Below, in pieces: positions 4,347 to 51,994 of a DNA stretch of 64,000 nt; the stretch's first letter is position 1, and each line of letters starts with the position of its first letter. The notes beneath the pieces are model-generated. The model searched no databases. It was not told the origin of the DNA and saw only the letters and a list, made by a program, of their open reading frames with translations. The position numbers and the translations under genes are program-made. The stretch is taken from the IMG/VR virus record IMGVR_UViG_3300033182_000674, positions 62,001-126,000 of that record; one strand, 5' to 3'.

Positions 4347-4362
4347 TTTTTTCTCCTCTAAA

Positions 4363-12205: not shown

Positions 12206-12230
12206 TTACTATTCCTTAAAATTTTAAAAA

Positions 12231-13439: not shown

Positions 13440-13449
13440 TTCTTATTCC

Positions 13450-14979: not shown

Positions 14980-14980
14980 A

Positions 14981-16204: not shown

Positions 16205-16213
16205 TTAATTATC

Positions 16214-16519: not shown

Positions 16520-16565
16520 TTTAATTTTCTCTAAGGTTATGGTTATTAGATCTATTTATATGTTT

Positions 16566-17015: not shown

Positions 17016-17027
17016 TCTTATTCCGCC

Positions 17028-18032: not shown

Positions 18033-18035
18033 ATA

Positions 18036-19850: not shown

Positions 19851-19862
19851 TTTATGCTCCCA

Positions 19863-20099
19863 TTAATCTCTGGCTTTAAACCATTCAACGACTTCATCTT
19901 CAGAAGTCCAATCTGATCTAGATCCATCATTGTTTGTTTTCCAAGGTTGTAAGCAAACACTTCTTTTATTGTTACTATCAACAACCATAAAAATTTCTGC
20001 TACAGTACCATCTAATACTGCTTCATATGTTATGTCAATTGCAACTTCTGTTCCATCTGAATCAGCTGTTGTTTTTTGAATAATAAAATTGGTCGCCAT
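19863..20099 (-). CDS. Small hypothetical protein (possible fibre chaperone)
   Basis: GGAG RBS and late promoter at 20128-20135. Confidence 0.55.
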   Translation of the reverse strand: MATNFIIQKTTADSDGTEVAIDITYEAVLDGTVAEIFMVVDSNNKRSVCLQPWKTNNDGSRSDWTSEDEVVEWFKARD

Positions 20100-20130
20100 T
20101 GCGTTTATCTCCTTGGGTTTATATCTCTAT

Positions 20131-23118: not shown

Positions 23119-23137
23119 ATATTATAGTTCCAACAAA

Positions 23138-24871: not shown

Positions 24872-24923
24872 TTTGTTAAACCCTATCAGTTGTTTGTTAT
24901 TATACTATTTATAGTTATTTTAA

Positions 24924-37368: not shown

Positions 37369-38055
37369 CTATTCTGATATAAAATCATTTGCCATAGGGA
37401 ATACCTCAGCAATCACCTTGGCACATTCTCTTGCAAGTTCCATATGCTCTTTTTGAGTTCCATGACCAGATCGCAATTGGATATAATGTACCCAACTACG
37501 AAGAGTTCCATTGACATACAATCTAGACTTAGTTAAACCTTCTGGTAAAACAACTCTAGCTTGTTCTTTTGCAATACCATTATGGATTGCCCATTCATAT
37601 GCTTCTTTAGCAGCATCAATAACTCTTTTCTGATGTTGTTCAAAAAGATAAGCTAACTTTTGATCATCAGTTGGAATAGAGTTTTGACGATTATTATAAT
37701 CTTGTAGACGACATTCACGTGTTACAAATTGATCACCAAACTCTGCTGGATCTGCATAACGTTGTGAAAATTCTTGGAATGAAAAAGATCTATGACGGAG
37801 TAATTGACGAGCAATATCTCTAGTAGTATCTACTTCAATACAAGCGCTTACCATCTCTAATGGAGACCAATGAGCATGCTTAATAAGATAATTAATAAGC
37901 TTTTCTGAAGTTTCAATATTATATTGATTATTAGGATTAGATACTCTAGCTGCAAATGCAATCAACTCTTGAACATTATTCATTTGTTCAGATAGATTGT
38001 CATCAAATACATCTTTATGTAATTGTGAGTAACTTATAAGTTTTGCTTTCATCAT
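37369..38055 (-). CDS. thyX: FAD-dependent thymidylate synthase
   Basis: RHRSFSFQEFSQRY ThyX signature, H.SP.E, EQAR.VLP. Confidence 0.95.
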   Translation of the reverse strand: MMKAKLISYSQLHKDVFDDNLSEQMNNVQELIAFAARVSNPNNQYNIETSEKLINYLIKHAHWSPLEMVSACIEVDTTRDIARQLLRHRSFSFQEFSQRYADPAEFGDQFVTRECRLQDYNNRQNSIPTDDQKLAYLFEQHQKRVIDAAKEAYEWAIHNGIAKEQARVVLPEGLTKSRLYVNGTLRSWVHYIQLRSGHGTQKEHMELARECAKVIAEVFPMANDFISE

Positions 38056-39425: not shown

Positions 39426-39766
39426 ATTACGTCCTTCATGGTAATGCCTTCATTATTTACAATAGCTGATTCAATAATAGCTAGTAAAGTATCTGCAGCT
39501 TGTTGTTGTAGCCCAACTGTATCTTCTGTTACAGTTTCATCTGGACTACTTATAAGACTAAAATCAAATGTCATGTAAGATTGTTGTTCATCTAACTCAC
39601 CATTTTCATCTTCACCTTTAATAGTAATCTTGCCATATTCAATTACAGTTTCAGGATAATCACCAGTTAGAAAACGAACACGCCAAAGATCACCGTCAGC
39701 TGGAACAAGTTGATAATCTTTATTCTCATAAAGACCAGTTTGCGGTTTATATTTTTCTTTACTCAT
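39422..39766 (-). CDS. Hypothetical protein at the gp40 position between uvsX and 41
   Basis: Synteny with T4 uvsX-40-41; start reassigned to 39766. Confidence 0.5.
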   Translation of the reverse strand: MSKEKYKPQTGLYENKDYQLVPADGDLWRVRFLTGDYPETVIEYGKITIKGEDENGELDEQQSYMTFDFSLISSPDETVTEDTVGLQQQAADTLLAIIESAIVNNEGITMKDVI

Positions 39767-40814
39767 CTGCATTCTCCGCAATCTCTTCCATATCAACTAA
39801 TGAATTGTAGCCAATAGAGTATTGCTTCTTAAGAAACTCTTTAAAGTCTGTACCTTCAAAGATTGGAGTCCAGAATTCTTCTTCTAACGTTTGGGCTTCT
39901 CGTACTTTAGGCTCCACAAGTTCACCAGTTTCTTTATCCACCCGACAATACCAACCATTGCTAGGCTTAACGACGTAACCACCAGCAAGGCCAGCATCGA
40001 GAAGACCACTATAACGCTGAACACCACCTTCCCAAGAAACAGTAATAGGAATTTTAGATTTTTCTTTAACATATCTTGACTTCTCTACATTAATTACAAA
40101 ATGATAACCTTGGATTTCTGTACCTTTCTTATCTTGTTGACGGCCAAGGATCCAGATGTTATCAGCTGAATAGTAGATACCAGTACCACCACCAACTACA
40201 TCTTTAGGGAACAAACCAATCTCTTTATAGGTGTGGTTAATAGCCAACAATGGAATATCTTTCATTGTTAGATAAGGTGTTGTCATACGGAACAAACCTT
40301 TAAGTGCTTTAGCGCGAGACATATCAGCAACTGATTTTTCATTCAATGCATCTTCCATTTCTTTCTTTGATGCAAGGTTACCAATAGAATCAATAACAAC
40401 AATTACTTTATCACCACGTTCGATTTGCTCAAGCTGGCCAATCATATCAAACTTAAGTTCTTCTACGTTAGTAATAGGAGTATGAAGAACACGTGAAGTG
40501 TCAATACCATATTGTTCAAAGTAAGATTGTGGTGAACCAAATTCTGAATCATAGAATAGCATAACAGCATCATCATATTTTTTCATATAAGCTGCAGCCA
40601 TCAACAAAGCAAAAGAAGTTTTAAAGTGTTTAGATGGACCAGCAAGAACTGTTAGTCCAGGAGTAACACCGCCATCAACAGAACCAGATAACGCAACGTT
40701 AATCATAGGAACGTTCGTTGGTACCATATCTTTTTCTTTAAAAAATTTAGATTCAGAAAGAACTTCAGTATGCTTAAGCTTAGAGTTCTTTTTAAGTTTG
40801 TCCATTATACTCAT
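39759..40814 (-). CDS. uvsX: RecA-like recombinase UvsX
   Basis: AGPSKHFKT, YDSEFG, DSIGNLASKKE, DMSRAK. Confidence 0.96.
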   Translation of the reverse strand: MSIMDKLKKNSKLKHTEVLSESKFFKEKDMVPTNVPMINVALSGSVDGGVTPGLTVLAGPSKHFKTSFALLMAAAYMKKYDDAVMLFYDSEFGSPQSYFEQYGIDTSRVLHTPITNVEELKFDMIGQLEQIERGDKVIVVIDSIGNLASKKEMEDALNEKSVADMSRAKALKGLFRMTTPYLTMKDIPLLAINHTYKEIGLFPKDVVGGGTGIYYSADNIWILGRQQDKKGTEIQGYHFVINVEKSRYVKEKSKIPITVSWEGGVQRYSGLLDAGLAGGYVVKPSNGWYCRVDKETGELVEPKVREAQTLEEEFWTPIFEGTDFKEFLKKQYSIGYNSLVDMEEIAENADE

Positions 40815-41206: not shown

Positions 41207-42400
41207 TTACATAAAACCGTCAAGAGTTGATGGCTCGTATTCAGACCAGAATGTCTGAGCTTTATTATCTTGAACAGCATATGGTGCTTCAATAGTATCA
41301 ATATTGCCACCTAAGAAGTTTTTAATATTAGTTGCCATATCCATTGCAGTACTTACTGGAACATTTTGTGCAATCATATTAAGATTTCTGCGTCCACCGT
41401 GCAAGATAAAATCTTTTGGCATCTTCATAATATCAAGAGCTTCTCTTGTATTGATATAACGATTTTCATCAGGGTGCGTAAGAGTAGTTACAAAATGACC
41501 AACAAAAGCACCAATATGTCCTTTACCAATCTCTGTCATCTTACGCATTAAGTTACCACCATTATCTAACTTATCTTGCATACGCTTACATTTTTGAGCA
41601 ATACTATCATGACCATTTGCTCTCATCCATTTAGCAACTTCAGTATATTTTATTTTATTTGCTTCAATATAAACCAATGGATTAGTCGACTTCTCAATCA
41701 TATTAAAGAAATCCATATGAGTAATTCCACCGTGCATTTCTTCTAAAATATATTGATAGTATGGATTATCAGTTGGCTTTTGTAAATTAGTTGGACTATT
41801 CCACATTAAGTCATTTACAATATCATCATGTTTAGATGATCTAATCTGTTCTTCAATACGAGTAAAAGGCCGTTTATAATATTCAAATACTGGAATCTTA
41901 TTACCTTTCCAAAAGAAGTAAAAGGTTCTATCACGTACTTGTGATAAGCCATGAAGAAGAGATTTAGTTTTGTATATACTAAGTGTATATCCATTTTCTC
42001 TTGCAAGCTTTCTCATTTGATGAACGATTGGTGCACCCATTTTACTTGCAAGACGTGGAGCATTTTCTCCCCAAAAAACAGCAGGTTTAATTTCTTCAAG
42101 AACATATTTAGCTGATGTAATCATCCAATCATTAGTTGTACTATCACTACGACTACTTGGGCTTAAAGAAGATAAACCTGCACAAGGACAAACTGCATTC
42201 ACTACGTCCACAGATTTATTTTGTAAATCACCTTGATCTAATAAATGATAAGGTACTTCATTATTATAATATTCTAAAAGTTGTTTATCATTATTTTCAA
42301 AAGGTGTATAAGAGAGAATATAATCAGGTTTATTACCAAATACATTCTGCATTGCAATCGTTTCACCACCAATAAGTGGTACTATACTAGCGTACTTCAT
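41207..42400 (-). CDS. DNA cytosine-C5 methyltransferase-like protein
   Basis: Motif IV CPCAGLS, VI ENA, VIII Q.R.R, IX/X R....RE....M..P.DF...QNVP; degenerate motif I (PLIGG). Confidence 0.75.
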   Translation of the reverse strand: MKYASIVPLIGGETIAMQNVFGNKPDYILSYTPFENNDKQLLEYYNNEVPYHLLDQGDLQNKSVDVVNAVCPCAGLSSLSPSSRSDSTTNDWMITSAKYVLEEIKPAVFWGENAPRLASKMGAPIVHQMRKLARENGYTLSIYKTKSLLHGLSQVRDRTFYFFWKGNKIPVFEYYKRPFTRIEEQIRSSKHDDIVNDLMWNSPTNLQKPTDNPYYQYILEEMHGGITHMDFFNMIEKSTNPLVYIEANKIKYTEVAKWMRANGHDSIAQKCKRMQDKLDNGGNLMRKMTEIGKGHIGAFVGHFVTTLTHPDENRYINTREALDIMKMPKDFILHGGRRNLNMIAQNVPVSTAMDMATNIKNFLGGNIDTIEAPYAVQDNKAQTFWSEYEPSTLDGFM

Positions 42401-43400
42401 TTAAAAATTTCCTCGCAGTTGCTAGTGCAGAATTAATTGCTTGGTGCATATCAACATAAACGTACATACCACAACGACCAATAAACTGCATCTTAGTTTC
42501 ATCTACCATATCTTTATACAGTTTATATATCTTTCTATTCTTGCCTTCTACATCTTTTACTGGATAATAACGCTCAAGATTATTATCACGATAGTCACAC
42601 GGTTCTTCATAAGTAAGAACAGTCATCTTATTATTATCGCCATGACCTGGAATATTTTTCCATTCGGTTACTCGAGTATATGGACCATCATGAGTAAAGT
42701 TAACAGTACCAGTTGGTAGCACTTTAGACATTGGTAATTCCACATTATGGAACTTAATAGAGCGATACGGTAATTCGCCATGACAAAAATGGAAGTAATC
42801 ATCAATTGGCATTGAATTAAAGATATAATCGTAATCATCTTCCATTTCATATGTAAATTCTGTATCTAAATTTACTGTAATGTTTTCATGTAAGAAAATA
42901 CTTTCAAAGACTTCAGTATAACCATTCTTTGGCATCATCTGATATTCATCATTAGGAAAATATAATTCGTTATCATCATCGCGAGTAGGAATACGATTAA
43001 TAATTGATGGATCTAGTTCATCAAGTGTTTTACCCCACATTTTTAGAGTATAAGGTCTAAAGAAAATATCTAAAACGTTTTCTTCACCAACAATCTCTTT
43101 AGTTTCTTTATTTACTGGAAGAGTTACATAACGGCCATCACTTAACTGTGCTTTTACTTTATGTTTATAATCAATCCATTCAGTAAACTTAGATAGCCAA
43201 TCAACAACATCTTTATTATTAGTATGAAACAAATGTGGACCATACTGGTGGATTCTGATGCCATTCGCATCAACATAATCATAGGCATTACCACCAATAT
43301 GGTCGCGTTTATCGATGACAGTTACTTCATGATCTGCTTCTGCTAATTCACGAGCAATAACTGCACCAGAAAATCCAGCACCAACTACTAAGACTTTCAT
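42387..43400 (-). CDS. glf: UDP-galactopyranose mutase
   Basis: VVGAGFSG, HIGGNAYD, H.YGPHLFHT, LPYRS, RYYP, GRCG.Y.Y.DMHQAI. Confidence 0.92.
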   Translation of the reverse strand: MKVLVVGAGFSGAVIARELAEADHEVTVIDKRDHIGGNAYDYVDANGIRIHQYGPHLFHTNNKDVVDWLSKFTEWIDYKHKVKAQLSDGRYVTLPVNKETKEIVGEENVLDIFFRPYTLKMWGKTLDELDPSIINRIPTRDDDNELYFPNDEYQMMPKNGYTEVFESIFLHENITVNLDTEFTYEMEDDYDYIFNSMPIDDYFHFCHGELPYRSIKFHNVELPMSKVLPTGTVNFTHDGPYTRVTEWKNIPGHGDNNKMTVLTYEEPCDYRDNNLERYYPVKDVEGKNRKIYKLYKDMVDETKMQFIGRCGMYVYVDMHQAINSALATARKFLNEVR

Positions 43401-44509
43401 AGAATAACTCCAAGTTCTTTTTGCTGTAGTTCTTTATCTAATGGATGATTCTTATATAGCATATGTTTTTGTGCTGCTGCTGTTTCCATCAATTCGTCAA
43501 GAGACATTTGCTCTACATCATGAGCAGTTAAGCTTGCAAGTTTTTCATCTCCATATAATAAAAACATTTCATCATATGCACCAATAAGAATAGAACCTGC
43601 GTCGGCAACTTGTAATGGACGAGCTCTCCACCAGCCTGATCCTGCATGATCATAACCTGGCATTAAACAACCCCATTGTTCTGCATAAACTTTACACATA
43701 TCACCTTCACCAAGCCGACGTTGTTTTTCTTTACGAGAACCAAAGAATTCAATCTCCCAATTAGTCACATTTTGTTTCTTTAACCACTTAGCAGTCTTAC
43801 CTTGTACTAATGAAGCAAAGTTAAAGATCTTAGCTTTATTAGAAGGAGATACAGTATCTTCAGCTTCAGTTAACGTCATTTGTTGTTCCATAAAATCCAT
43901 TTCATCTACAGGAATATCACCACGATCACCGGGTTTACGGTTACGATGATATGGATTAGGATTATAACCAACCAACAATTCTTTAGGATAGTCAATCAAC
44001 TTACTTAGATCACCACCCATAAAGACAGACATTAATACACGAGCTTTCTTTTCGCCAATATATTTTACTGCATCTAAAAGAATATCAGTATGTGGTTCCA
44101 ATACTTCACGTGAAAGAGTTGGATCACAACCTTGACTTTGTTGAATAGTAAACTCTTTTAATAGAGATTCTTTATCAGTGCATGATTGAATACCTTTAAA
44201 AATATCAGCTGTTTGCCAATCATCAAATGCTAGTACAAGATTTTCTTTTGGTGTAGCGTGAATAGCCCATAGACCATTATAAAAAGCAAGTTGTAATGCT
44301 TGACGTGGTGAAGCAAGAAAACAAATAACACGATGATATTCAGATAAATCTTCACCAATATTAACAAGACGTTGTTCTACTTCATAACCCATATCTTCTA
44401 AACAACGTATTAAAGAATAATGTGAAGGAACTACTTTCAATTGCTGGCGTAAATAAAAATCTTTTGTTGTTTGATTCTTATTCATACCAGTGATTAGAAT
44501 TTTTTTCAT
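43397..44509 (-). CDS. Putative GT-B DNA glycosyltransferase (T4 beta-glucosyltransferase-like)
   Basis: KVVPS...L..MGYEV...D...Y.R.I N-terminus and R..Q...AG.IL. C-terminal motif resemble T4 BGT as I recall it; start reassigned to 44509 (TAATG overlap). Confidence 0.6.
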   Translation of the reverse strand: MKKILITGMNKNQTTKDFYLRQQLKVVPSHYSLIRCLEDMGYEVEQRLVNIGEDLSEYHRVICFLASPRQALQLAFYNGLWAIHATPKENLVLAFDDWQTADIFKGIQSCTDKESLLKEFTIQQSQGCDPTLSREVLEPHTDILLDAVKYIGEKKARVLMSVFMGGDLSKLIDYPKELLVGYNPNPYHRNRKPGDRGDIPVDEMDFMEQQMTLTEAEDTVSPSNKAKIFNFASLVQGKTAKWLKKQNVTNWEIEFFGSRKEKQRRLGEGDMCKVYAEQWGCLMPGYDHAGSGWWRARPLQVADAGSILIGAYDEMFLLYGDEKLASLTAHDVEQMSLDELMETAAAQKHMLYKNHPLDKELQQKELGVIL

Positions 44510-45366
44510 TATTTTAACTCCATTTGATATGCTGATTCGCACATATCTTTTAGATCACGTTTAGTTTCCAAATACTTAGATTTGTTATCAACACACAACT
44601 CAGCTGGATCGCCTTCGCGGCGTGGTCCATATTCAATTTTAAAGTTGTTTGTACATTGTACCATTATATCACAAACCTCTGCATTTGTAAACCCTTTACC
44701 AGAACCAAGACATTCATAGTCTTTATTCTCAGGAGTATTTAGTGCAGCATTACAGATAGCATCTGCGAGATCTACCACATGAATATAATCACGAATACAT
44801 GTTCCATCACGCGTAGGATAATCATCTCCAAAGATAACCATCTTCTCTCTTTTACCAGCAGCAACCTCAGCTGCTACTCTAATAATATGAGTCGATTCAC
44901 CAATCTGTCTAAACTCACCACCAGATCCAGCAACATTAAAGAATCTAAAGATAGTATAATTCTTTGCCATCTGTTTAATAACATCTTCAGCCGCTACTTT
45001 AGATTTAGCATATGGAGAAATAGGATCAAATGCGCCAGCAGTAGAAGCAAAGATAAAGTGATCACAATCTACATTCTTTAAAACTTTCATTGTCTTATGA
45101 AGATTAGTATCATAATATTTTGCAGGATTAGTCATCGATTCTGCAACAGAAATATAACCTGCACAATGTACTACTACATCATATCGTCCAACCCACAAAG
45201 CAGCATCATGAATATCATAATGTGTTAGGTACTTTCTAACTGGTTTAGCATTAGGTGAATCTTCAATATCAACACCTGTTACTTTAAATCCAGCATCATA
45301 TAATGCTTTTGCGGTATGAGAACCAATATAACCATTTACACCTGTTACTAATGCAGTCTTACTCAT
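44509..45366 (-). CDS. galE: UDP-glucose 4-epimerase-like SDR
   Basis: TG..GYIGSH, ES...P.KYY..N, YAKSK, R.FNVAG, DGTCIRDYIHV.DLA, RREGDP. Confidence 0.88.
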   Translation of the reverse strand: MSKTALVTGVNGYIGSHTAKALYDAGFKVTGVDIEDSPNAKPVRKYLTHYDIHDAALWVGRYDVVVHCAGYISVAESMTNPAKYYDTNLHKTMKVLKNVDCDHFIFASTAGAFDPISPYAKSKVAAEDVIKQMAKNYTIFRFFNVAGSGGEFRQIGESTHIIRVAAEVAAGKREKMVIFGDDYPTRDGTCIRDYIHVVDLADAICNAALNTPENKDYECLGSGKGFTNAEVCDIMVQCTNNFKIEYGPRREGDPAELCVDNKSKYLETKRDLKDMCESAYQMELK

Positions 45367-45835
45367 TTTCTACTCCCAAGCGTTTAATATTAACTTTTGC
45401 TTCATTGCACATCGAAACAGTAGTATCATAAGACTCTTGCCAAATTGGTGGAATCTCTCCTTCCATATCCCAATAGATGTTTTTGACACCTACTTGGATA
45501 ACACCTTTGGCACATTCAGAGCACATAGGAAGCCCCCAGATGTAAAGATCTGATCCGTCTAAAGATACACCATTATACGTTGCATTATATATGCAGTTCA
45601 TTTCTGCGTGCACGACGTATTTATATTTAGTCTCGCGATCCTCATATCGGTTCTCGTCATCATTGATTCCTCGTGGGAAACCATTATAACCCTGTGCAAG
45701 TACTTGACCTTTTGAGCCGACTGCTACAGCACCGATCTTTTTAGATGGATCCTTAGACCAACCAGAAAATTCTTTCGCTAAATTCATATAGCGGTTTTGC
45801 CATGATTTATTAACAGGCCACATAATTAATCCCAC
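45359..45835 (-). CDS. cd: dCMP deaminase
   Basis: SKDPS, GYNGFPRG, HAE.N, P.C.EC. Confidence 0.92.
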   Translation of the reverse strand: MGLIMWPVNKSWQNRYMNLAKEFSGWSKDPSKKIGAVAVGSKGQVLAQGYNGFPRGINDDENRYEDRETKYKYVVHAEMNCIYNATYNGVSLDGSDLYIWGLPMCSECAKGVIQVGVKNIYWDMEGEIPPIWQESYDTTVSMCNEAKVNIKRLGVENE

Positions 45836-46371
45836 AAACTTCTAAAATATTTTCCAAATAAACGAAATCCATTGTCCATACGTTTAGAATATTCATCATA
45901 CTTTTCTTTATCAAACTTTCCTTTTAAAGAACTTGTATCCATTTCATACCACTCATATTCTTCATTTTCACCCTCATCATTAGGAAATAAAAGTAATTGA
46001 GCTGGTCCAACACCAGTACTCTCCATTTCAAATAAACTTACTGAATCGCTATCATAGTTAAAGAACTGGTCTTCCCATTCGTTATTAAGACTAGCAAAAG
46101 CAAAAATCATTTCATCAATTACATAATCCCAAGCTTTAAAATGATATGGATCTGTTTCACCTACTTCAATAGGCAAATCACAGCGTAAGCGTTCTGGACG
46201 ATCTTCCATATCAACAAATGGCGCACCATGTTTTTCCTTTTTTAATTGTCTCAACATTGGTTCAACTAACAATGCTAGTGTATGATCCATTGACCAAGTA
46301 TCGTAATCATCTATATGAATAGAGACATCACGATAACCTTCTTCTACATATGGTCCAATTTGTACATTCAT
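45826..46371 (-). CDS. Conserved phage hypothetical protein
   Basis: DTWSMD.TLA, W....DEMIFAF, GF.LFGKY...LWD; start reassigned to 46371 (ATGA overlap). Confidence 0.65.
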   Translation of the reverse strand: MNVQIGPYVEEGYRDVSIHIDDYDTWSMDHTLALLVEPMLRQLKKEKHGAPFVDMEDRPERLRCDLPIEVGETDPYHFKAWDYVIDEMIFAFASLNNEWEDQFFNYDSDSVSLFEMESTGVGPAQLLLFPNDEGENEEYEWYEMDTSSLKGKFDKEKYDEYSKRMDNGFRLFGKYFRSLWD

Positions 46372-46823
46372 TTCATTAAATCTCCAAAGAAAGAGAAAGC
46401 AACATCTTTTGCAACTTGATCTGTTACTTCCCACATCGGTATCATAAGATTAATTTCCTCTGATGTTGGTGGTACAAACATTTTATTTGTATCATCAAAC
46501 CGACCTTCATTAATAGTATTCATCCAAATTACATAATCAGGTTTAAGCAACTTACGCGTTTCAGGTGTAGGAGAAATCATATCAACAATAGAATAAGGAT
46601 ATACAGAATTATCTACAAGTTTACGCATACGAGTTGCAGCTCGAATACGACCTTCTTCTGAAAAATCCCAATCTTGATATGCTTCACGAATTTTATCTGC
46701 ATTAAACCAATTAGGAATTACGCCATGATTTTCAAATTCAGTTTTTAGTTTTTCAGCAAATGTAGTCTTACCTGAACCAGGTAGACCCATCACTAATATC
46801 ATTTTATTCGACATCCCAATCAT
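46368..46823 (-). CDS. Adenylylsulfate-kinase-like P-loop kinase
   Basis: GLPGSGKTT, NAD.IR, DFS.EGR.R. Confidence 0.75.
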   Translation of the reverse strand: MIGMSNKMILVMGLPGSGKTTFAEKLKTEFENHGVIPNWFNADKIREAYQDWDFSEEGRIRAATRMRKLVDNSVYPYSIVDMISPTPETRKLLKPDYVIWMNTINEGRFDDTNKMFVPPTSEEINLMIPMWEVTDQVAKDVAFSFFGDLMK

Positions 46824-47511
46824 TCCTAATTAAATCAAAATGGCGTTCATATACATGTAAATTTTGAACTTGCCAGTAAATTGTACTTGGTGTAATAACA
46901 TCATCAATAGTTTCTGTTTGACGATTAATGTCATCACATAGTTTACGAAGAACATATTTTTGCCAAGCAAAATCATTCTTATATCCAAAGACGACATCAT
47001 TTGATCGCATTTGAACTACTGCATACATTTTTTTATTACGAATATAATAAGTTACACCATTAGTACAAATAAAATCAGACTTACCATCTTCATTAAATTC
47101 TGTCCAGATAGTTGGACGTTGATAAACCATTTCAGCACGACGGCCGTCTGGATTATTGAGTAACTCATTTAATACTTTCTCGTATTGATTACCATATTGT
47201 TCAGAGAAAATTAGTAATCCATAATTTGAATTAATAAGGCCGTCGCTGTTAGCAGCATACTTCCAAGCAGCAGGAGGATCGCGATCTTCGCCGAAAATGT
47301 CATTGATATTGTTCGATTGTTTTTCATACCATTCAATCTCCTTCATGATATATTCATTATTAGGTTTACCAAAGATTGCTGGTTCATCAGCAATAAAAGA
47401 AGCGCCAATCCATTCAATAGTCTTAGCACCAGTTTTATCTGTGGTAAAGTTCTTTGCTCTTAGTTCGCCTTCAAAGAAAGCACGGACATTTTTAACTGTT
47501 GGGATATTCAT
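46804..47511 (-). CDS. 42: dCMP hydroxymethylase (T4 gp42 homolog)
   Basis: DKTG.KTIE.IGASF.ADEP.IFG, INSNYG, SDF.CTN, MRSNDVVFG..ND.AWQKYVL, LHVY.RHF, all closely matching T4 gp42; Asp retained at the cytosine-specificity position. Confidence 0.92.
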   Translation of the reverse strand: MNIPTVKNVRAFFEGELRAKNFTTDKTGAKTIEWIGASFIADEPAIFGKPNNEYIMKEIEWYEKQSNNINDIFGEDRDPPAAWKYAANSDGLINSNYGLLIFSEQYGNQYEKVLNELLNNPDGRRAEMVYQRPTIWTEFNEDGKSDFICTNGVTYYIRNKKMYAVVQMRSNDVVFGYKNDFAWQKYVLRKLCDDINRQTETIDDVITPSTIYWQVQNLHVYERHFDLIRNDWDVE

Positions 47512-47930
47512 TATTTAGCCTTTTCAATATTATAAACTGATTTACGTAAACCACTACTTGAGAATCTATGATCTCGTTTATTAAAGTAAAGTTCAATATC
47601 ACGTCGACGACATTCATCTTTACCAGTAAAGTCTTTATCACGATACTCATCACCGAGAATACGAATATTAATCGGATACATGTTTATTATATCAAGTAAA
47701 TCGGCTTCTGTACAATACGGAATGATTTCATCTACATATTTTACTGCAGCCAATTGTGTATGTCTTTCTACAATGGTTTGTACCGGTGAATTCTTTTCAG
47801 GACGATCAACTGATGGATCTACTTGTAATCCACAAATTAAATAATCACATCGTGCTTTTGCATCACGCAACATTGTGATATGACCAGCATGTAATAAATC
47901 AAATGTACTACAAGTAAATCCTACAATCAT
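47511..47930 (-). CDS. TagD/RfaE-like cytidylyltransferase
   Basis: FDLLHAGH, ER...L....YVDE, R.H..SSS. Confidence 0.85.
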   Translation of the reverse strand: MIVGFTCSTFDLLHAGHITMLRDAKARCDYLICGLQVDPSVDRPEKNSPVQTIVERHTQLAAVKYVDEIIPYCTEADLLDIINMYPINIRILGDEYRDKDFTGKDECRRRDIELYFNKRDHRFSSSGLRKSVYNIEKAK

Positions 47931-48040
47931 TGCTTCTTTTCCTTCGCTTTGTTATTCATCAATTTACAAGATCCCCATTTACATGATGGGTTTATTTTCT
48001 TTTTACATACTACACAAGTATCAGTCTGAGATGAATTCAT
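47927..48040 (-). CDS. Small Cys/Lys-rich peptide (37 aa), not in the ORF track
   Basis: MNSSQTDTCVVCKKKINPSCKWGSCKLMNNKAKEKKQ; stop overlaps the next ATG (ATGA). Confidence 0.4.
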   Translation of the reverse strand: MNSSQTDTCVVCKKKINPSCKWGSCKLMNNKAKEKKQ

Positions 48041-48377
48041 TGTATTCTTCTTCTGTCATAAATGATTCAATTAAACTAGTATCTTCAACTTCTAATTTAA
48101 ACATCCATACAGATGCATCATCATTTAAAGTTTCTGGTGTATCTAGAATATCTTCATTAACTTCGACTACTGTTCCAGCCATTGGACAATAAACATCTGA
48201 TGCTGCTTTTACAGATTCAACTACTGCACAATCTTCATCTGCTTCATAGTACTTACCAACTTCTGGTAACTCAATGAAAACTAAATCACCAAGTAATTCT
48301 GCAGCATGCGCAGTAATACCAACAAAGACGTAATCTCCGTCTTGTTCTACCCATTCGTGTTCTTTTGTATAACGCAT
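48021..48377 (-). CDS. gcvH: Glycine cleavage system H protein
   Basis: YT.EHEWV, VGIT..A...LGD.VF.ELP, lipoyl-Lys motif VESVKAASD. Confidence 0.93.
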   Translation of the reverse strand: MRYTKEHEWVEQDGDYVFVGITAHAAELLGDLVFIELPEVGKYYEADEDCAVVESVKAASDVYCPMAGTVVEVNEDILDTPETLNDDASVWMFKLEVEDTSLIESFMTEEEYNEFISD

Positions 48378-48721
48378 TATTCTTTTCTTCCTCCGTCAAA
48401 GACGCAAACAAAGTATAAGCCATTCTCATTAGCATATACTCTATGAAAAGCACCATCTGGTATTTGAATAATATCACCTGCTCTTACATTGAACACTTCA
48501 TCATCAATTTCCATTTCACCATCGCCATACATGAAAAAATAAACTTCTTCTTGTCCTTCATGGCTATGACCATTGGTTGCTTTATTTGGTTGTAATCTTG
48601 TTGAACTAAGTACTAGGTTATTTAGTAATGTATTATCAGTGACCACATAACGATCATCTGATTTTACTACATTACCATTTACTACCCACCCAGCATGAAC
48701 ATAATCTTCAATATCAATCAT
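48377..48721 (-). CDS. Cupin-domain protein
   Basis: GHSH..QEEVY.F..G.G and GD...IP.G.FHRV. Confidence 0.85.
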   Translation of the reverse strand: MIDIEDYVHAGWVVNGNVVKSDDRYVVTDNTLLNNLVLSSTRLQPNKATNGHSHEGQEEVYFFMYGDGEMEIDDEVFNVRAGDIIQIPDGAFHRVYANENGLYFVCVFDGGRKE

Positions 48722-49481
48722 TATTAAAACCTAACAATTTATTGTTATATTCCAATAGAGATTTAGTAGCAGTTGGATCAATGCCTACACTTTCAGCCCA
48801 AGCACACCAACCATAGATATCTTTTGGAATACATTTACTATTAGCTCCACGATTATCAGGGAAGACAAAAGTCCACCATAGATTTTGTCGTGGGTCATCA
48901 CCATAAACAGCTTCTCGAATAGTATAATAATCTACTCCAGCTGCTTCACATGCATCATATAATTCTTGGCATTGCATTACCTTATAGAAAATTGCACGAT
49001 TTTCAGAGAATTTAATAATCTCTGCTTCATATGCAGATACTTGACGAATATTAACATTAGCATTATAAGCTTGTTGATAACATTCAATAACTTTACGAGT
49101 ATCTTCTTTAGTACCACCAAGAATCATAAACTGACGAGAATCCATTTGTAAGAATGGATGATTAGGTGTTTCACCAAGATATTCTGGTTGAACTACAATG
49201 CGTTTATTATATTTCTTAGCCATCTCATCAGCAAATCCTGGTTGAGTAGCAGAACGAATAACAATGAAATCACATCCGCATTCTTTAATAGCATCTTCTA
49301 CAGCAGAACAATCTAATCCATCGCCTTGATTCCACGGAGTAGGTACGGCAAGAAAAGCAATATCACAATTTTCTAAAGGCTTTGTAAATCCTTCGATATA
49401 TTTATCGTAAACTTGTGCATCAGGAAAAAGTTTTTGTGTTGCTTTGCCAATCCAACCGTATCCAATGATTCCTACTTTCAT
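48714..49481 (-). CDS. UDP-glucose/GDP-mannose dehydrogenase-like protein (lacks C-terminal domain)
   Basis: GIIGYG.IG, AVPTP, IRS, PEYL, AE..K..EN, CIPKD. Confidence 0.8.
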   Translation of the reverse strand: MKVGIIGYGWIGKATQKLFPDAQVYDKYIEGFTKPLENCDIAFLAVPTPWNQGDGLDCSAVEDAIKECGCDFIVIRSATQPGFADEMAKKYNKRIVVQPEYLGETPNHPFLQMDSRQFMILGGTKEDTRKVIECYQQAYNANVNIRQVSAYEAEIIKFSENRAIFYKVMQCQELYDACEAAGVDYYTIREAVYGDDPRQNLWWTFVFPDNRGANSKCIPKDIYGWCAWAESVGIDPTATKSLLEYNNKLLGFNND

Positions 49482-49493
49482 ATTATTATTCTC

Positions 49494-49727
49494 CTAAACA
49501 ATTTTTTGTTTTGTACATTCTTCAAAGGTCTTAAAGGTTCGATCAAACTTAATCTCGTATAATTCCATTACACCAATAAGAAGATTTATAAGTTTATCTT
49601 GATGCTCTGGTTTCATACCTTCAAAGAATGGATCATCACCAACGAACTTATATATGTCTTTTATATCTGTTGTTATATTCCAACAGTCAAGAATTTCTTG
49701 TTCTAGGTCAAATCGTGTTTTATTCAT
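49494..49727 (-). CDS. Conserved phage hypothetical protein
   Basis: RFDLEQ.I..CW....DI and N.L.G...LY..KF motifs. Confidence 0.6.
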   Translation of the reverse strand: MNKTRFDLEQEILDCWNITTDIKDIYKFVGDDPFFEGMKPEHQDKLINLLIGVMELYEIKFDRTFKTFEECTKQKIV

Positions 49728-50031
49728 TGTCGGCTGCCACATATCTATCATCCCATTTCTTTTGTTCTAAAAAGTAAACATACAAGAAAGCACATTGTGT
49801 TAAAGCATGTGCTAAATGAGGTTCACCAGATTCTGGATCAAAGTCTTCACCACTCCAAAAAGAATTTAGATGTCGTTGAAGAGAAGAATAAGAACGTGAC
49901 CATTCAGAAGGATCTTTACGCCAGTTATTAGCGCCATATTTTGTAGCACCAAACTCTAGTACTGTAGCCATAGCTTCGATAACTTCTGGGGGTACTAAAG
50001 CGATAGGTGCTTTACCATCATCGTATTTCAT
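49720..50031 (-). CDS. DUF5664-like (dATP/dGTP diphosphohydrolase N-terminal-like) protein
   Basis: K.D.GK....L.P, V..FGA.KYG..NW, RHL....GE..DPESG..HLAHA. Confidence 0.85.
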   Translation of the reverse strand: MKYDDGKAPIALVPPEVIEAMATVLEFGATKYGANNWRKDPSEWSRSYSSLQRHLNSFWSGEDFDPESGEPHLAHALTQCAFLYVYFLEQKKWDDRYVAADNE

Positions 50032-50039
50032 ATTATATC

Positions 50040-50510
50040 TCAGTTAAGTTGATTACAAAATGGAAGCTCATTACTTGAGCTTTCCGCTAAGTATTTATGC
50101 GTCAAACGAGTCTCAGTTTCTTTATGTGTTGAAATTTCTTCTTTTATTTTATGACCCGTTAATGGACAAGGATATTCTACCACATGTCGAGGACAACGTA
50201 CACAGTAAACTTCTACAGTATCTTCTTCAATAGAATCTAGTACATCCATAATACGACGATTAGTAGCATCACCATATTTACCACGACCTTGTTGATAAGT
50301 ATTTAGTCGACCAGCAAAACCCATTTTACCGCCAGCTTTACCAATCTTCATTAATTGATTATTTACAAACATAAAATAAACAATATCACCCATAGCAATT
50401 AGATCTTTACGACGTAGACCTTCGTCAAGTTTAAAACGAAACTCGTCGCCATTCATAACGAACTTACCTAGGTATTTAGTATTACGTAAAACATTCTGTT
50501 CAAAATTCAT
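50040..50510 (-). CDS. GIY-YIG nuclease resembling T4 endonuclease II (DenA)
   Basis: IVY....N..L..IGK, R.N.Y, D.T, VE.Y...C, E...P..N in EndoII-like spacing (recalled). Confidence 0.6.
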   Translation of the reverse strand: MNFEQNVLRNTKYLGKFVMNGDEFRFKLDEGLRRKDLIAMGDIVYFMFVNNQLMKIGKAGGKMGFAGRLNTYQQGRGKYGDATNRRIMDVLDSIEEDTVEVYCVRCPRHVVEYPCPLTGHKIKEEISTHKETETRLTHKYLAESSSNELPFCNQLN

Positions 50511-50523
50511 AGCAAATCTCCAC

Positions 50524-50605
50524 TTTATGGATATATTATAAGCTAATTCTTCTCAAATGTACACAGTTTTTTTCAGTTATTTTTTCTTTTAGAATCAATG
50601 GCTTA
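50524..50605 (-). promoter_or_regulatory. Second copy of the early promoter/IHF-site element
   Basis: TGTACA(50558-63)-17-TATAAT(50535-40); AATCAATGGCTTA at 50593-50605; ~50 bp near-identical to 35547-35598. Confidence 0.8.
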
Positions 50606-50607
50606 GA

Positions 50608-51543
50608 TCAAACCATCTTATATGCGTACTCAATAGCACGATCTGCTTCCACATTTAGTGGTCTATTTTCATACAAATTTGATGTATCTCTATCAAGTTC
50701 ACGTATAAGCATTTCAATTTCTGTTGCAGAGATAGGATATTCTTTCTTAAGAGCATTAATTGCAATAGAACTCATAATACGATATATCATAGCATAACGA
50801 CCAGTATTATCAATATGAGCAATGTCTTTATATTCTTTTACTAGCTTCTTATTTACAAATGGACAATCAGTATAACCTGACCAAGATATAGTAGTATTTT
50901 GAAGTTTAGATTTTTTGTATTCGATAACTTTCTTTTGTAAATCATCAGGCAGACGATCCATAAAAGTTCTGCCTTCTTTTATTGGAGCTGGATGTTTTTC
51001 TATAAGTGCATAAGGATCAACGTAATCACCAATATTAGTGAAAATAAAGTTATCAGCAGAATCGTAAGCTGCAGGGATGTAATACATTCTAGATAAGTCT
51101 TTAGTTTGTCTATCTCCCACTGAACCAACTTCTGTGTTGAGAGCGTACCAGAATTTTTTGATTGCATCTGCTCCAACTGTTGTTTTAAGTGGGAAAACAA
51201 GTCTGAACTTTGGTTTAGCAATGGTATTACTAGCAGTACTATAACAAACATAGTAATACCTGCCGAAACGAGAATGAAGTTCATTTTTTAGATCGCCTTT
51301 GAATTCGTGATCGTCTACATCGATCGCTGCCCAACCAGCCCAAGCAATAACGTTTTTATTCGCTCGAGTAGTACCATTAGTATATATGGCTGGAGACATC
51401 AATTGTGCGTCTTTTTTTCCTTTACGTCGTATTTTTGACAGATCGTATAAAAACTTCTCAAACTTATTCCAGTCTGAGAAGTTCATATTTTTGTCAGTCT
51501 TATTATCGTAAATAGACTTAAAAAATGTCGCTGAGATTTCCAT
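50608..51543 (-). CDS. Archaeo-eukaryotic primase (prim-pol)-like protein
   Basis: SPA.Y....R...NV, AIDVDD, YSTAS....PKFRLVFPL, D....D.SR.YY.P and a helical C-terminal domain. Confidence 0.7.
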   Translation of the reverse strand: MEISATFFKSIYDNKTDKNMNFSDWNKFEKFLYDLSKIRRKGKKDAQLMSPAIYTNGTTRANKNVIAWAGWAAIDVDDHEFKGDLKNELHSRFGRYYYVCYSTASNTIAKPKFRLVFPLKTTVGADAIKKFWYALNTEVGSVGDRQTKDLSRMYYIPAAYDSADNFIFTNIGDYVDPYALIEKHPAPIKEGRTFMDRLPDDLQKKVIEYKKSKLQNTTISWSGYTDCPFVNKKLVKEYKDIAHIDNTGRYAMIYRIMSSIAINALKKEYPISATEIEMLIRELDRDTSNLYENRPLNVEADRAIEYAYKMV

Positions 51544-51937
51544 GATTATCTTTATGGCTTGGTGCAGTCCAACCTTCTGGTTTCATTAGATCTGGTAATC
51601 CAAGTGGATTAGGACGCTCTGGTTTAATACCAGGTTCTTTTGACATATTAGCTGCATGTACACGATCCCATGCTTCATGTGCGTTAACACCAAATGCATC
51701 AAGTGTTCCAATTGCAACTACACATAAATCAATTAAGCCATCAACAACTTCTTCTGCATCTTTATTCATAAGAGCTGAACGTGTTTCATTATACTCTTCA
51801 CCAATAAAATCTAAGCGAAATTGTAGAAACTTTTGAAGTGTTTCATAATCTTTTTCAAATAATTTTTTAAGTGCCCACTCATGCACACCAAACTTTTGAT
51901 GCATATCGTGAATATCTTTTACCCAATCTTTAGACAT
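51518..51937 (-). CDS. MazG-like/PRA-PH NTP pyrophosphohydrolase (candidate dCTPase/dUTPase)
   Basis: EE..E, E.VD.L.D, V..ANMSK, KPEGW..P; promoter at 51963-51991. Confidence 0.8.
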   Translation of the reverse strand: MSKDWVKDIHDMHQKFGVHEWALKKLFEKDYETLQKFLQFRLDFIGEEYNETRSALMNKDAEEVVDGLIDLCVVAIGTLDAFGVNAHEAWDRVHAANMSKEPGIKPERPNPLGLPDLMKPEGWTAPSHKDNHGNLSDIF

Positions 51938-51994
51938 TATAAACTCCTTTGTTATAGACTATATTATAACACATGATCAAGAATTTGTAAACCA

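What the first reader, a model, noticed from the sequence alone, without database searches (positions are those of the whole stretch)
41207..51937. Candidate new DNA hypermodification system: furanose-sugar (Galf or Araf) glycosylated hydroxymethylcytosine
Seen: a tightly coupled gene block between gp43 and uvsX, where T4 keeps gene 42 and beta-gt. It encodes a near-canonical dCMP hydroxymethylase, and then galE -> BGT-like GT -> UDP-galactopyranose mutase (glf) -> C5-MTase-like, with overlapping stop/start codons. Established: GalE makes UDP-Gal, Glf converts UDP-Galp to UDP-Galf (and also accepts UDP-L-Arap), and T4 glucosylates hmC using host UDP-Glc. Inference: this phage makes its own furanose donor and transfers it to hmC in DNA, giving galactofuranosyl-hmC or an arabinofuranosyl variant. 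I do not know this base from characterised phages. The UDP-Glc dehydrogenase-like, cytidylyltransferase, kinase and cupin genes could elaborate the glycan further. The likely role is protection from restriction and CRISPR.
Basis: partly seen in the sequence, partly recalled or inferred. Interest (0 to 1): 0.92.

Follow-up and report, generated by a model that had tools for sequence, protein, structure and literature searches.

The report
Phage cytosine galactofuranosylation gene block
An uncultured marine T4-like phage carries, where T4 keeps its hydroxymethylcytosine and glucosyltransferase genes, a conserved cassette that most likely coats its DNA cytosines with a ring-contracted sugar (galactofuranose); this is a predicted new variant of a known anti-restriction strategy and no chemistry has tested it.

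Summary
It holds a T4-gp42-type dCMP hydroxymethylase. Its 12-residue active-site signature is identical to gp42 and lacks the D169N change that marks 5-hydroxycytosine synthases. Then come a GalE-like epimerase, a phage-only GT-B protein whose best solved-structure match is T4 beta-glucosyltransferase, a UDP-galactopyranose mutase and a C5-methyltransferase-like enzyme.

The transferase and mutase are adjacent in 69 of 76 related viral loci. In 49 of 54 loci a gp42-type enzyme lies upstream. In two other lineages the same pair follows a TET/JBP dioxygenase, a second route to hydroxymethyl-pyrimidine. The family is almost absent from bacterial genomes and was never seen in an LPS cluster.

Galactofuranosyl-5hmC is therefore the best-supported product, but the sugar and its ring form are inferred. 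An arabinofuranose route looks unlikely because no UDP-xylose synthase is present.

Novelty is moderate:
- Furanosyl cytosines are known (Araf-5hoC in RB69).
- A phage mutase feeding DNA galactosylation was proposed for RL38J1.
- Epimerase-plus-transferase cassettes acting on 5hmC are known.

The conserved methyltransferase-like enzyme in a presumed hmC phage remains unexplained.

The parts
51518..51937 (-). MazG/PRA-PH-type all-alpha NTP pyrophosphohydrolase; candidate dCTPase (functional analogue of T4 gp56)
   Evidence: Pfam PF01503 E 8e-11; PHROG 671; best PDB match is DR2231. Conserved next to gp43 in nearly all related loci. No significant similarity to T4 gp56, so the dCTPase role is inferred.
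50608..51543 (-). 311-aa primase-like protein; probably replication rather than modification
   Evidence: PHROG 9765 'DNA primase' E 2e-51; no Pfam hit. Also present next to gp43 in phage C48C1, which lacks the TS homolog.
49720..50031 (-). dGTP_diPhyd_N (MazZ-like) small NTP-diphosphohydrolase domain protein
   Evidence: Pfam PF18909 E 5e-34. Found in only a few related loci (L033, L047, L097/L098).
48714..49481 (-). Short NDP-sugar dehydrogenase-like protein (N and central domains only)
   Evidence: Pfam PF03721 and PF00984; TIGR03026 84.5 bits, below the 189.8 cut-off. GxGxxG and KCIPKD motifs present, no C-terminal domain. A similarly short form occurs in C48C1.
48377..48721 (-). Cupin_2 protein of unknown substrate
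   Evidence: Pfam PF07883 E 2e-11. Recurs just upstream of the cytidylyltransferase in several related loci.
48021..48377 (-). Full glycine-cleavage H protein (GcvH)
   Evidence: Pfam PF01597 E 5e-39. Passes the NCBIfam cut-offs (150 vs 117 bits; 137.9 vs 115.85). Lipoyl-lysine motif ESVKA present. Seen only in the window's own contig among sampled loci.
47511..47930 (-). Small cytidylyltransferase of the CDP-alcohol-forming (GCT) type
   Evidence: Pfam PF01467. Best PDB matches are ethanolamine-phosphate, glycerol-3-phosphate and choline-phosphate cytidylyltransferases. 72-81% identical in loci where the GT is only 45-50% identical; lies directly after Glf in L048.
46804..47511 (-). dCMP hydroxymethylase (T4 gp42 type)
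   Evidence: 53% identity to Tequatrovirus gp42. ThyA-numbered L143D, C146, D169 retained, N177D. The 12-residue signature is identical to T4 gp42 in 67 of 67 linked homologs.
46368..46823 (-). P-loop kinase (APS-kinase/PSTK-like)
   Evidence: Pfam PF01583 and KTI12; PHROG 10255; weak PDB matches to PSTK and APS kinase. Substrate unknown; present in a subset of loci.
45826..46434 (-). 202-aa protein of unknown function
   Evidence: PHROG 11543 (unknown function) E 5e-35. No Pfam, NCBIfam or PDB match.
45359..45835 (-). dCMP deaminase
   Evidence: Pfam PF00383 E 1e-16. Directly follows the TS homolog in most related loci.
44509..45366 (-). Compact GalE-like UDP-hexose 4-epimerase (285 aa)
   Evidence: TIGR01179 galE 201 bits, best hit but below the 262 cut-off. 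All 32 top PDB matches are UDP-glucose 4-epimerases. GxxGxxG and YxxxK motifs present.
43397..44509 (-). Phage-specific GT-B glycosyltransferase; predicted DNA hydroxymethylcytosine glycosyltransferase
   Evidence: No Pfam or NCBIfam hit. AlphaFold pLDDT 87. Foldseek PDB top hits are T4 BGT (E 2e-6), SenB and T4 AGT. 720 homologs, all from metagenomes or phages.
42387..43400 (-). UDP-galactopyranose mutase (Glf/UGM)
   Evidence: Pfam GLF E 8e-51 plus NAD_binding_8. D. radiodurans UGM E 9e-77, with a deletion of about 40 aa in the helical domain. TIGR00031 278.7 bits, below the 303.75 cut-off.
41207..42400 (-). C5-cytosine methyltransferase-like enzyme of unexplained role
   Evidence: Pfam PF00145 E 5e-20. 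Motifs PC, GEN, QxRxR and QNVP are invariant in 29 distinct homologs down to 46% identity; motif I reads PLIGGE. Foldseek top hits are CmoX 8yf3, M.HaeIII and M.HhaI.
37369..38055 (-).
   Evidence: Pfam PF02511 E 6e-44. Supplies dTMP, so the ThyA-family homolog is not needed for that.

Best explanation
The block is a two-stage cytosine hypermodification system of an uncultured marine T4-like, pelagimyophage-like phage. Stage 1 acts on the nucleotide pool. MazG-type pyrophosphohydrolase(s) return dCTP to dCMP (inferred). The gp42-type enzyme converts dCMP to 5-hydroxymethyl-dCMP using methylene-tetrahydrofolate (supported by sequence). A phage or host kinase takes it to the triphosphate, and gp43 incorporates it (inferred). 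dCMP deaminase and ThyX keep dTTP supplied. Stage 2 acts on DNA. The GalE-like epimerase makes UDP-galactose from host UDP-glucose. Glf contracts it to UDP-galactofuranose. The BGT-fold transferase, translationally coupled to both, puts the sugar on the hydroxymethyl group, giving galactofuranosyl-5hmC. This shields the DNA from restriction enzymes, CRISPR nucleases and glucosyl-hmC-specific type IV enzymes. The cytidylyltransferase, cupin, short dehydrogenase, kinase and GcvH are accessory (donor or one-carbon supply, or further decoration). The role of the C5-methyltransferase-like enzyme is unresolved.
For: The gp42-type identity rests on 53% identity and on residues L143D, D169 and N177D. 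The whole active-site signature is identical to T4 gp42 in 67 of 67 linked homologs, using the diagnostic residues defined in PMC13326640. The GT model is confident (pLDDT 87), and its best solved-structure matches are the two T4 DNA glucosyltransferases and SenB. Glf matches bacterial UGMs at E 9e-77 with key arginines kept. The epimerase's top 32 PDB matches are all GalE. GT and Glf are adjacent in 69 of 76 loci, and a gp42-type TS lies upstream in 49 of 54. The same trio is present in cultured Aeromonas Tulanevirus phages, where Aes012 gp42 has the T4-type signature. Erwinia phage FBB1 carries the adjacent GT-Glf pair, but its TS homolog was not examined. In phage C48C1 and MAG contig L099 the cassette instead follows a TET/JBP dioxygenase, with the order TET-(GalE)-GT-Glf. 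The rare exception L048 still lies between ThyX and ribonucleotide reductase. The GT family gave only 5 hits in 185,579 species genomes, all on MAG contigs; three of the five have neighbours from the same cassette. The position equals that of gene 42 and beta-gt in T4, and of the arabinosylation cluster in RB69.
Against: There is no chemical or enzymatic evidence. The GT has no significant sequence similarity to BGT, and its TM-scores to BGT are only about 0.5. Glf and GalE both fall below the NCBIfam equivalog cut-offs, and Glf lacks about 40 residues of the helical domain, so donor specificity could differ. Five related loci have the GT without Glf. Many relatives lack the GalE-type gene or carry a different SDR after Glf. 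All known galactofuranosyltransferases I can recall have other folds (my own knowledge). A conserved, apparently active C5-methyltransferase in the same operon is hard to reconcile with complete replacement of C by hmC.
Confidence: 0.58

Rival explanations
1. The system glycosylates 5hmC in DNA, but the sugar is not galactofuranose. It could be a pyranosyl hexose, a hexuronic acid, L-arabinofuranose, GalfNAc, or a sugar further decorated by a CDP-alcohol-derived phospho-group.
For: Glf and GalE score below their equivalog cut-offs, and Glf has a domain-2 deletion. A short UGDH-like gene and a CDP-alcohol-type cytidylyltransferase are present. HexA- and HexNAc-modified cytosines were produced by related epimerase-plus-GT cassettes (bioRxiv 10.1101/2023.12.21.572611). 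UGMs can accept UDP-L-Ara (established knowledge).
Against: The 4-nt overlap and near-universal adjacency of GT and Glf argue that the mutase product is the donor. No UDP-xylose synthase is present for an arabinose route. The UGDH-like gene is absent from most relatives.
Confidence: 0.22
2. The sugar genes are auxiliary metabolic genes that remodel the host surface (O-antigen/LPS) or glycosylate virion proteins, and the TS homolog is simply a second thymidylate synthase. This is how such genes were read in pelagimyophages (PMC7029224).
For: PMC7029224 interprets UGDH, rfaE-like and glycosyltransferase genes of pelagimyophages as LPS-related, and 'two thymidylate synthases plus dCMP deaminase' as dTMP supply. 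Galf is a common O-antigen sugar (established knowledge).
Against: The TS homolog has N177D and L143D, which specify dCMP and a non-methyl product, and ThyX is present for dTMP. The GT's nearest folds are DNA glucosyltransferases. The cassette is embedded between replication and nucleotide genes and alternatively couples to TET/JBP. The GT family is essentially absent from bacterial genomes.
Confidence: 0.07
3. The base is a glycosylated 5-hydroxycytosine (ether-linked, as in RB69, DLP3 and RL38J1) rather than 5-hydroxymethylcytosine.
For: The only phage family for which a Glf has been tied to DNA galactosylation (RL38J1, Pootjesviridae) uses 5hoC (PMC13326640).
Against: All 67 linked TS homologs, the window's included, keep D169. 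The D169N change diagnostic of 5hodCMP synthases is absent. Identity to T4 gp42 is 53%, against 26% to RB69 gp48.
Confidence: 0.04

Closest known systems
T4 gene 42 / gene 56 / beta-glucosyltransferase system (glucosyl-5hmC)
   Same: Same genomic slot between gp43 and uvsX. Same type of dCMP hydroxymethylase, with an identical active-site signature. The transferase has the same GT-B fold, and T4 BGT is its best solved-structure match. The logic is the same: substitute in the nucleotide pool, then glycosylate after replication.
   Different: The donor is predicted to be phage-made UDP-Galf, not host UDP-Glc. The phage encodes GalE and Glf. The GT shows no significant sequence similarity to BGT. 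The dCTPase candidate is a different MazG-type protein. Extra genes are present (C5-MTase-like, cytidylyltransferase, GcvH).
Rhizobium phage RL38J1 / Pootjesviridae: Gal-(Glc)n-5-hydroxycytosine with a phage Glf (PMC13326640)
   Same: A phage-encoded UDP-galactopyranose mutase (37% identical to the window's) is proposed to supply UDP-Galf for galactosylation of a C5-oxygenated cytosine made by a TS homolog.
   Different: That base is 5hoC (D169N enzyme, ether link), not 5hmC. Its transferases were not found as homologs of the window GT (no Rhizobium phage among the tblastn hits). Its Glf is not adjacent to the GT.
RB69 / DLP3 arabinofuranosyl-5-hydroxycytosine (PMC13326640; PMC6024577)
   Same: T4-like phages with a furanose sugar on cytosine C5. 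The cluster sits in the same gp43-uvsX interval and includes a nucleotide kinase, a GT-B transferase and a TS homolog.
   Different: The sugar is D-Araf, made from ribulose-5-P through an isomerase, phosphatase, kinase and nucleotidyltransferase; there is no mutase. The base is 5hoC.
Metagenomic phage MT/TET (5mYOX) or ThyS plus epimerase plus GT clusters (bioRxiv 10.1101/2023.12.21.572611; PMC8256090)
   Same: GT activity on 5hmC depends on a partner sugar epimerase. T4-BGT-like GT-B enzymes lie next to TS homologs or TET. The C48C1 and L099 versions of this cassette are TET-(GalE)-GT-Glf.
   Different: No mutase or furanose is mentioned in that work. Here a Glf is an obligate neighbour of the GT.
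CmoX DNA cytosine C5-carboxymethyltransferase (PMC12783734, PDB 8yf3)
   Same: It is the top Foldseek match of the window's MTase-like protein. It is a phage C5-MTase homolog used for hypermodification.
   Different: CmoX is defined by an SPPC motif and by Arg replacing the motif-X Asn. The window protein has CPCAG and keeps Asn in QNVP, so it is not of the CmoX type.

Membership tests
T4 gp42-type dCMP hydroxymethylase (ThyA superfamily) | ThyA fold with the catalytic Cys146 | tested here: met
   Pfam PF00303 E 3e-11; Cys aligned with ThyA C146.
T4 gp42-type dCMP hydroxymethylase (ThyA superfamily) | N177D (dCMP rather than dUMP) and L143D/E (non-methyl product) | tested here: met
   Asp at both positions. 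The same holds in 67 of 67 linked homologs. Criteria are from PMC13326640.
T4 gp42-type dCMP hydroxymethylase (ThyA superfamily) | Produces 5hm-dCMP from dCMP and methylene-THF | not testable with these tools
   Needs an enzyme assay or the E. coli plasmid LC-MS assay.
5hodCMP synthase (RB69 gp48 type) | D169N substitution | tested here: not met
   Asp is retained at position 169 in the window protein and in all linked homologs.
UDP-galactopyranose mutase (Glf/UGM) | N-terminal FAD-binding Rossmann motif plus a full GLF domain | tested here: met
   PF13450 E 1e-20 and PF03275 covering 2-203 of 203, E 8e-51. PDB UGMs at E 9e-77 to 1e-45.
UDP-galactopyranose mutase (Glf/UGM) | Reaches the curated equivalog score (TIGR00031) | tested here: not met
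   278.7 bits against a cut-off of 303.75. The shortfall coincides with a deletion of about 40 aa in the helical domain.
UDP-galactopyranose mutase (Glf/UGM) | Substrate-binding arginines (D. radiodurans R198 and R305 equivalents) | tested here: met
   Both are aligned and conserved in the phmmer alignment. The residue numbering rests on my own count.
UDP-glucose 4-epimerase (GalE) | SDR GxxGxxG and YxxxK motifs, with GalE as the best family match | tested here: met
   Motifs are visible in the translation. TIGR01179 is the best hit at E 2e-59. The top 32 PDB matches are all GalE.
UDP-glucose 4-epimerase (GalE) | Reaches the curated equivalog score | tested here: not met
   201.3 bits against a cut-off of 262.3. 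The protein is about 45 residues shorter than GalE.
T4 beta-glucosyltransferase (GT-B DNA glycosyltransferase) | Two-Rossmann-domain GT-B fold most similar to BGT | tested here: met
   Foldseek 1qkj/1nzd E 2e-6 to 5e-6, probability 1.00, TM about 0.5; AGT 1y6g E 6e-4.
T4 beta-glucosyltransferase (GT-B DNA glycosyltransferase) | Detectable sequence homology to BGT | tested here: not met
   BLASTP gives only a 15-residue match at E 0.015. A profile of the family finds no BGT in the PDB.
T4 beta-glucosyltransferase (GT-B DNA glycosyltransferase) | Catalytic Asp equivalent to BGT D100, and base flipping of hmC in duplex DNA | not tested
   A family-invariant DDW follows strand 4 at residues 97-99. 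No residue-level superposition was available.
C5-cytosine DNA methyltransferase | Motifs IV (PC), VI (ENV), VIII (QxRxR) and X (GN.V) | tested here: met
   CPCAG, GENAP, QVRDR and QNVP are invariant over 29 distinct homologs. The fold matches M.HaeIII and M.HhaI at E 1e-11.
C5-cytosine DNA methyltransferase | Canonical SAM-binding motif I (FxGxG) | tested here: inconclusive
   The motif reads PLIGGE, invariant in the family, with the first Gly replaced by Leu. The Pfam match starts only at profile position 28.
CmoX C5-carboxymethyltransferase | SPPC motif and Arg in place of the motif-X Asn | tested here: not met
   The window protein has CPCAG and retains the Asn (QNVP).

The most novel reading that the evidence does not exclude
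The product is more than a monosaccharide on hmC. The invariant C5-methyltransferase-like enzyme has a non-canonical cofactor motif and sits in an operon with hmC synthesis, where ordinary C5 methylation has no obvious substrate. It might act on hmC or glycosyl-hmC itself, or on the few remaining cytosines, using covalent C6 chemistry. Separately, the highly conserved CDP-alcohol-type cytidylyltransferase might feed a phospho-alcohol decoration of the furanose. Either would give a teichoic-acid-like or doubly modified cytosine unknown in any DNA.
Probability: 0.1. Interest if true: 0.88.

Novelty: new variant of a known kind. Interest (0 to 1): 0.62.

Why it matters
If correct, a large clade of abundant ocean T4-like phages has DNA in which cytosine carries a furanose hexose, as do cultured Aeromonas phages and possibly an Erwinia phage. 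The clade includes pelagimyophage-like lineages: the GT family has 720 members in metagenomes, and 198 viral-contig stretches encode relatives.

- Marine genes so far read as 'a second thymidylate synthase' and 'LPS auxiliary genes' would be reinterpreted.
- A new base would be added to the hypermodification catalogue.
- Systematic bias against these phages in restriction-, ligation- and nanopore-based viromics would be predicted.
- The work would provide a DNA-directed galactofuranosyltransferase, and a portable GalE-GT-Glf cassette that evolution has attached both to gp42-type and to TET/JBP-type hydroxymethyl-pyrimidine sources.

Tried and rejected
- **Megablast of the block against 50,697 phage records:** no match. 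The phage has no close sequenced isolate.
- **BLASTP of the GT against T4 BGT, and a GT-family profile against PDB sequences:** nothing significant. Only fold comparison linked them.
- **5-hydroxycytosine hypothesis:** rejected on the D169 signature.
- **L-arabinofuranose route:** considered and disfavoured, because no UXS-type decarboxylase is present and the SDR scores as GalE.
- **CmoX-type carboxymethyltransferase reading of the MTase-like protein:** rejected on the motif-X Asn and the absence of SPPC.
- **TET in the window:** none found.
- **phmmer of the MTase-like protein, and of the 202-aa protein, against the PDB:** nothing useful.
- **PADLOC:** only generic MTase models.
- **MazG against T4 gp56:** no significant similarity.
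- **Literature:** nothing found on phage C48C1 or on DNA chemistry of Tulanevirus phages. Iyer et al. 2013 could not be retrieved, so I could not check whether the Aeromonas GT family was already predicted there.

Full report
**Observation.** The window region 41207-51937 is a run of minus-strand ORFs between a family-B DNA polymerase (gp43, 51995-54544) and uvsX (39759-40814). In transcription order the genes are:

- a MazG/PRA-PH pyrophosphohydrolase
- a 311-aa primase-like protein
- a 156-aa protein
- a dGTP_diPhyd_N protein
- an 85-aa protein
- a short NDP-sugar-dehydrogenase-like protein
- a cupin
- a complete GcvH
- a small cytidylyltransferase
- a ThyA-family protein (46804-47511)
- a P-loop kinase
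- a 202-aa protein
- a dCMP deaminase
- a GalE-like SDR
- a 370-aa protein with no Pfam or NCBIfam match
- a UDP-galactopyranose mutase
- a C5-methyltransferase-like protein

From the cytidylyltransferase to the methyltransferase-like gene, every junction overlaps by 1 to 67 nt. T4 has 43-imm.1-imm-42-beta-gt-segA-uvsX at this position, and RB69 has its arabinosylation cluster there.

**Source.** The window comes from IMG/VR contig UViG_3300033182_000674, 219,676 bp. It has no near-identical sequenced phage. Its polymerase is 54% identical to that of phage C48C1 (Kyanoviridae) and about 47% identical to cyanomyovirus polymerases. Relatives with the same block carry ribosomal protein S21 and a curli-type Gcw_chp gene. 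Curli-operon genes are described for pelagimyophages in PMC7029224. S21 as a pelagiphage trait is my own recollection.

**The base.** The ThyA homolog is 53% identical to Tequatrovirus gp42. PMC13326640 gives diagnostic positions in E. coli ThyA numbering: N177D for a dCMP substrate, L143D/E for a non-methyl product, and D169N for 5-hydroxy-dCMP synthases. I aligned the window protein with E. coli ThyA, T4 gp42 and RB69 gp48. It has D143, C146, D169 and D177, exactly as gp42 does, whereas RB69 gp48 has N169. The same 12-residue signature is found in all 67 TS homologs that lie next to relatives of the transferase. It is also found in gp42 of Aeromonas phage Aes012. ThyX is encoded nearby (37369-38055), so the ThyA homolog is not needed for dTMP. 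The predicted base is 5-hydroxymethylcytosine, not 5-hydroxycytosine and not thymine.

**The transferase.** The 370-aa protein belongs to a family of at least 720 proteins found only in metagenomes and phages. An AlphaFold model built on 30 homologs is confident (pLDDT 87.4, pTM 0.86). Its best matches among solved structures are:

- T4 beta-glucosyltransferase (E 2e-6 and 5e-6)
- the selenosugar synthase SenB
- T4 alpha-glucosyltransferase bound to DNA

Viral predicted structures gave uncharacterised phage proteins and generic GT-B enzymes. Sequence similarity to BGT is not significant. 'BGT-like' therefore holds at the level of fold only.

**The donor pathway.**

- *Mutase.* It has the FAD-binding Rossmann motif and a full GLF domain. 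It aligns with bacterial UGMs at E 9e-77 and keeps the substrate arginines. It lacks about 40 residues of the helical domain and misses the NCBIfam equivalog cut-off (278.7 vs 303.75 bits).
- *Epimerase.* It carries GxxGxxG and YxxxK. Its best family is GalE (201 bits, cut-off 262), and its 32 best PDB matches are all UDP-glucose 4-epimerases.
- *Arabinose route.* No UDP-xylose synthase is present, so a UDP-L-arabinose route is not encoded.

**Comparative test of the coupling.** A scan of IMG/VR with the GT family returned 198 relatives, of which 80 loci were kept.

- Of 76 loci with at least 1.2 kb downstream, 71 have Glf, 69 of them within 100 bp of the GT.
- Of 54 loci with at least 5 kb upstream, 49 have the gp42-type TS. 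It is usually followed by dCMP deaminase and preceded by the MazG and primase-like genes next to gp43.
- The GT-Glf pair is also adjacent in cultured Aeromonas Tulanevirus phages and in Erwinia phage FBB1.

Phage C48C1 has no ThyA-family gene anywhere in its genome. There, the gene immediately upstream of GT-Glf, overlapping the GT start, is a TET/JBP dioxygenase (PF12851, E 3e-17). A MAG contig (L099) has TET-GalE-GT-Glf in a row. The cassette is thus attached to two unrelated ways of making hydroxymethyl-pyrimidine.

One exception without a nearby ThyA homolog (L048) has ThyX-GalE-GT-Glf-cytidylyltransferase-ribonucleotide reductase, which is still nucleotide metabolism. Across one genome for each of 185,579 bacterial and archaeal species, the family gave five hits, all on MAG contigs. 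Three of those five (L097, L098, L099) have neighbours from the same cassette. That scan relied on two peptide patterns and so can miss divergent members.

**Accessory genes.**

- *Cytidylyltransferase.* It is most similar to enzymes that make CDP-ethanolamine, CDP-glycerol and CDP-choline. It is more conserved (72-81% identity) than the GT (45-50%) in the same loci.
- *Dehydrogenase-like protein.* It keeps the NAD motif and the catalytic cysteine but lacks the nucleotide-sugar-binding domain. C48C1 has a similar short form.
- *Kinase.* It resembles APS and PSTK kinases rather than dNMP kinases.
- *GcvH.* It passes the curated cut-offs and keeps the lipoyl-lysine. A plausible role is to boost methylene-THF for hydroxymethylation, but it occurs only in this contig.

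None of these roles is established.

**The methyltransferase-like protein.** It has a C5-MTase fold. Motifs IV, VI, VIII and X are invariant across 29 distinct homologs down to 46% identity, and motif I is an invariant but non-canonical PLIGGE. Its top structural match is the phage carboxymethyltransferase CmoX. It lacks the SPPC and Arg signature of CmoX and keeps the Asn typical of SAM-dependent methyltransferases. It is restricted to a subclade of the GT-bearing loci, and a gp42-type TS is present wherever the flank is long enough to show one. Why a phage that should have no free cytosine C5 keeps an apparently active C5-methyltransferase in this operon is unexplained.

**Comparison with what is known.**

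- PMC13326640 showed D-arabinofuranosyl-5-hydroxycytosine in RB69 and DLP3. It proposed that the Glf of Rhizobium phage RL38J1 supplies UDP-Galf for a Gal-(Glc)n-5hoC base.
- The preprint 10.1101/2023.12.21.572611 showed that metagenomic GTs install hexose, HexNAc and hexuronic acid on 5hmC, often only with a partner epimerase, and that BGT-like GTs lie near TS homologs or TET. It mentions no mutase or furanose.
- PMC7029224 read the corresponding pelagimyophage genes as a second thymidylate synthase and as LPS auxiliary genes.

I found no report of galactofuranosyl-5hmC.

**Verdict.** It is unproven for the exact sugar. It is a new variant of a known kind rather than a new kind of system.

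Noticed in passing
L001:6564-10011 (phage C48C1, record 49583-53030) and L099:5727-10018: The GT-Glf pair (with GalE in L099) directly follows a TET/JBP dioxygenase in genomes without a ThyA-family gene. C48C1 has only a Dam-type MTase, so the substrate there may be 5hmU, which would give a galactofuranosyl analogue of base J.
   Followed up: partly
window 41207-42400 (-): A C5-methyltransferase-like enzyme with all catalytic motifs invariant, but motif I reading PLIGGE, is conserved in an operon with hmC synthesis and glycosylation. Its top fold match is CmoX, but the CmoX signature is absent. Its role in a presumed hmC genome is unexplained.
   Followed up: partly
window 48021-48377 (-): The phage encodes a complete GcvH with its lipoyl-lysine, inside the hydroxymethylation block. 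It may boost methylene-THF supply. It was seen only in this contig among about 90 related loci.
   Followed up: partly
window 48714-49481 (-); L091:36267-37226: A short NDP-sugar-dehydrogenase-like protein has the NAD motif and the catalytic Cys but no UDP-binding C-terminal domain. A similar short form occurs in phage C48C1, next to an SDR between gp43 and uvsX.
   Followed up: partly
window 47511-47930 (-); L048:12024-12440: The small cytidylyltransferase is closest to CDP-ethanolamine, CDP-glycerol and CDP-choline synthases. It is far more conserved than the GT across loci, and in L048 it directly follows Glf. It may make a second activated group for decorating the sugar.
   Followed up: partly
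L071, L072, L078, L083, L088: A subclade of the GT family (about 48% identity) lies between a gp42-type TS and uvsX without any Glf. These phages may use a different donor.
   Followed up: no
L030, L041, L076 (for example L041:12111-12869): In many relatives a different 252-aa SDR, only 24-29% identical to the window's GalE-like protein, sits after Glf instead of a GalE-type gene before the GT.
   Followed up: partly
window 49720-50031 (-): A dGTP_diPhyd_N (MazZ-like) domain protein sits in the block, in addition to the MazG/PRA-PH protein. L007 has a DUF1599 protein at the equivalent place.
   Followed up: no
window 9608-27860 (-): A run of large proteins carries Laminin_G, cadherin-like, F5/8 type C, PA14/GLEYA and glycine-rich domains. 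It includes a patch of higher G+C (0.41 against about 0.33) at 12-16 kb. It is probably the hypervariable host-recognition region.
   Followed up: no
window 6691-7656 (-): A 321-aa P-loop protein of the zeta-toxin/AAA_33 kinase family lies near the ribonucleotide reductase genes (3121-6153).
   Followed up: no
L002:9229-10275 (Aes012_228): In Aeromonas Tulanevirus phages a further 348-aa protein with no Pfam match follows Glf and the GT. It could be a second transferase.
   Followed up: no
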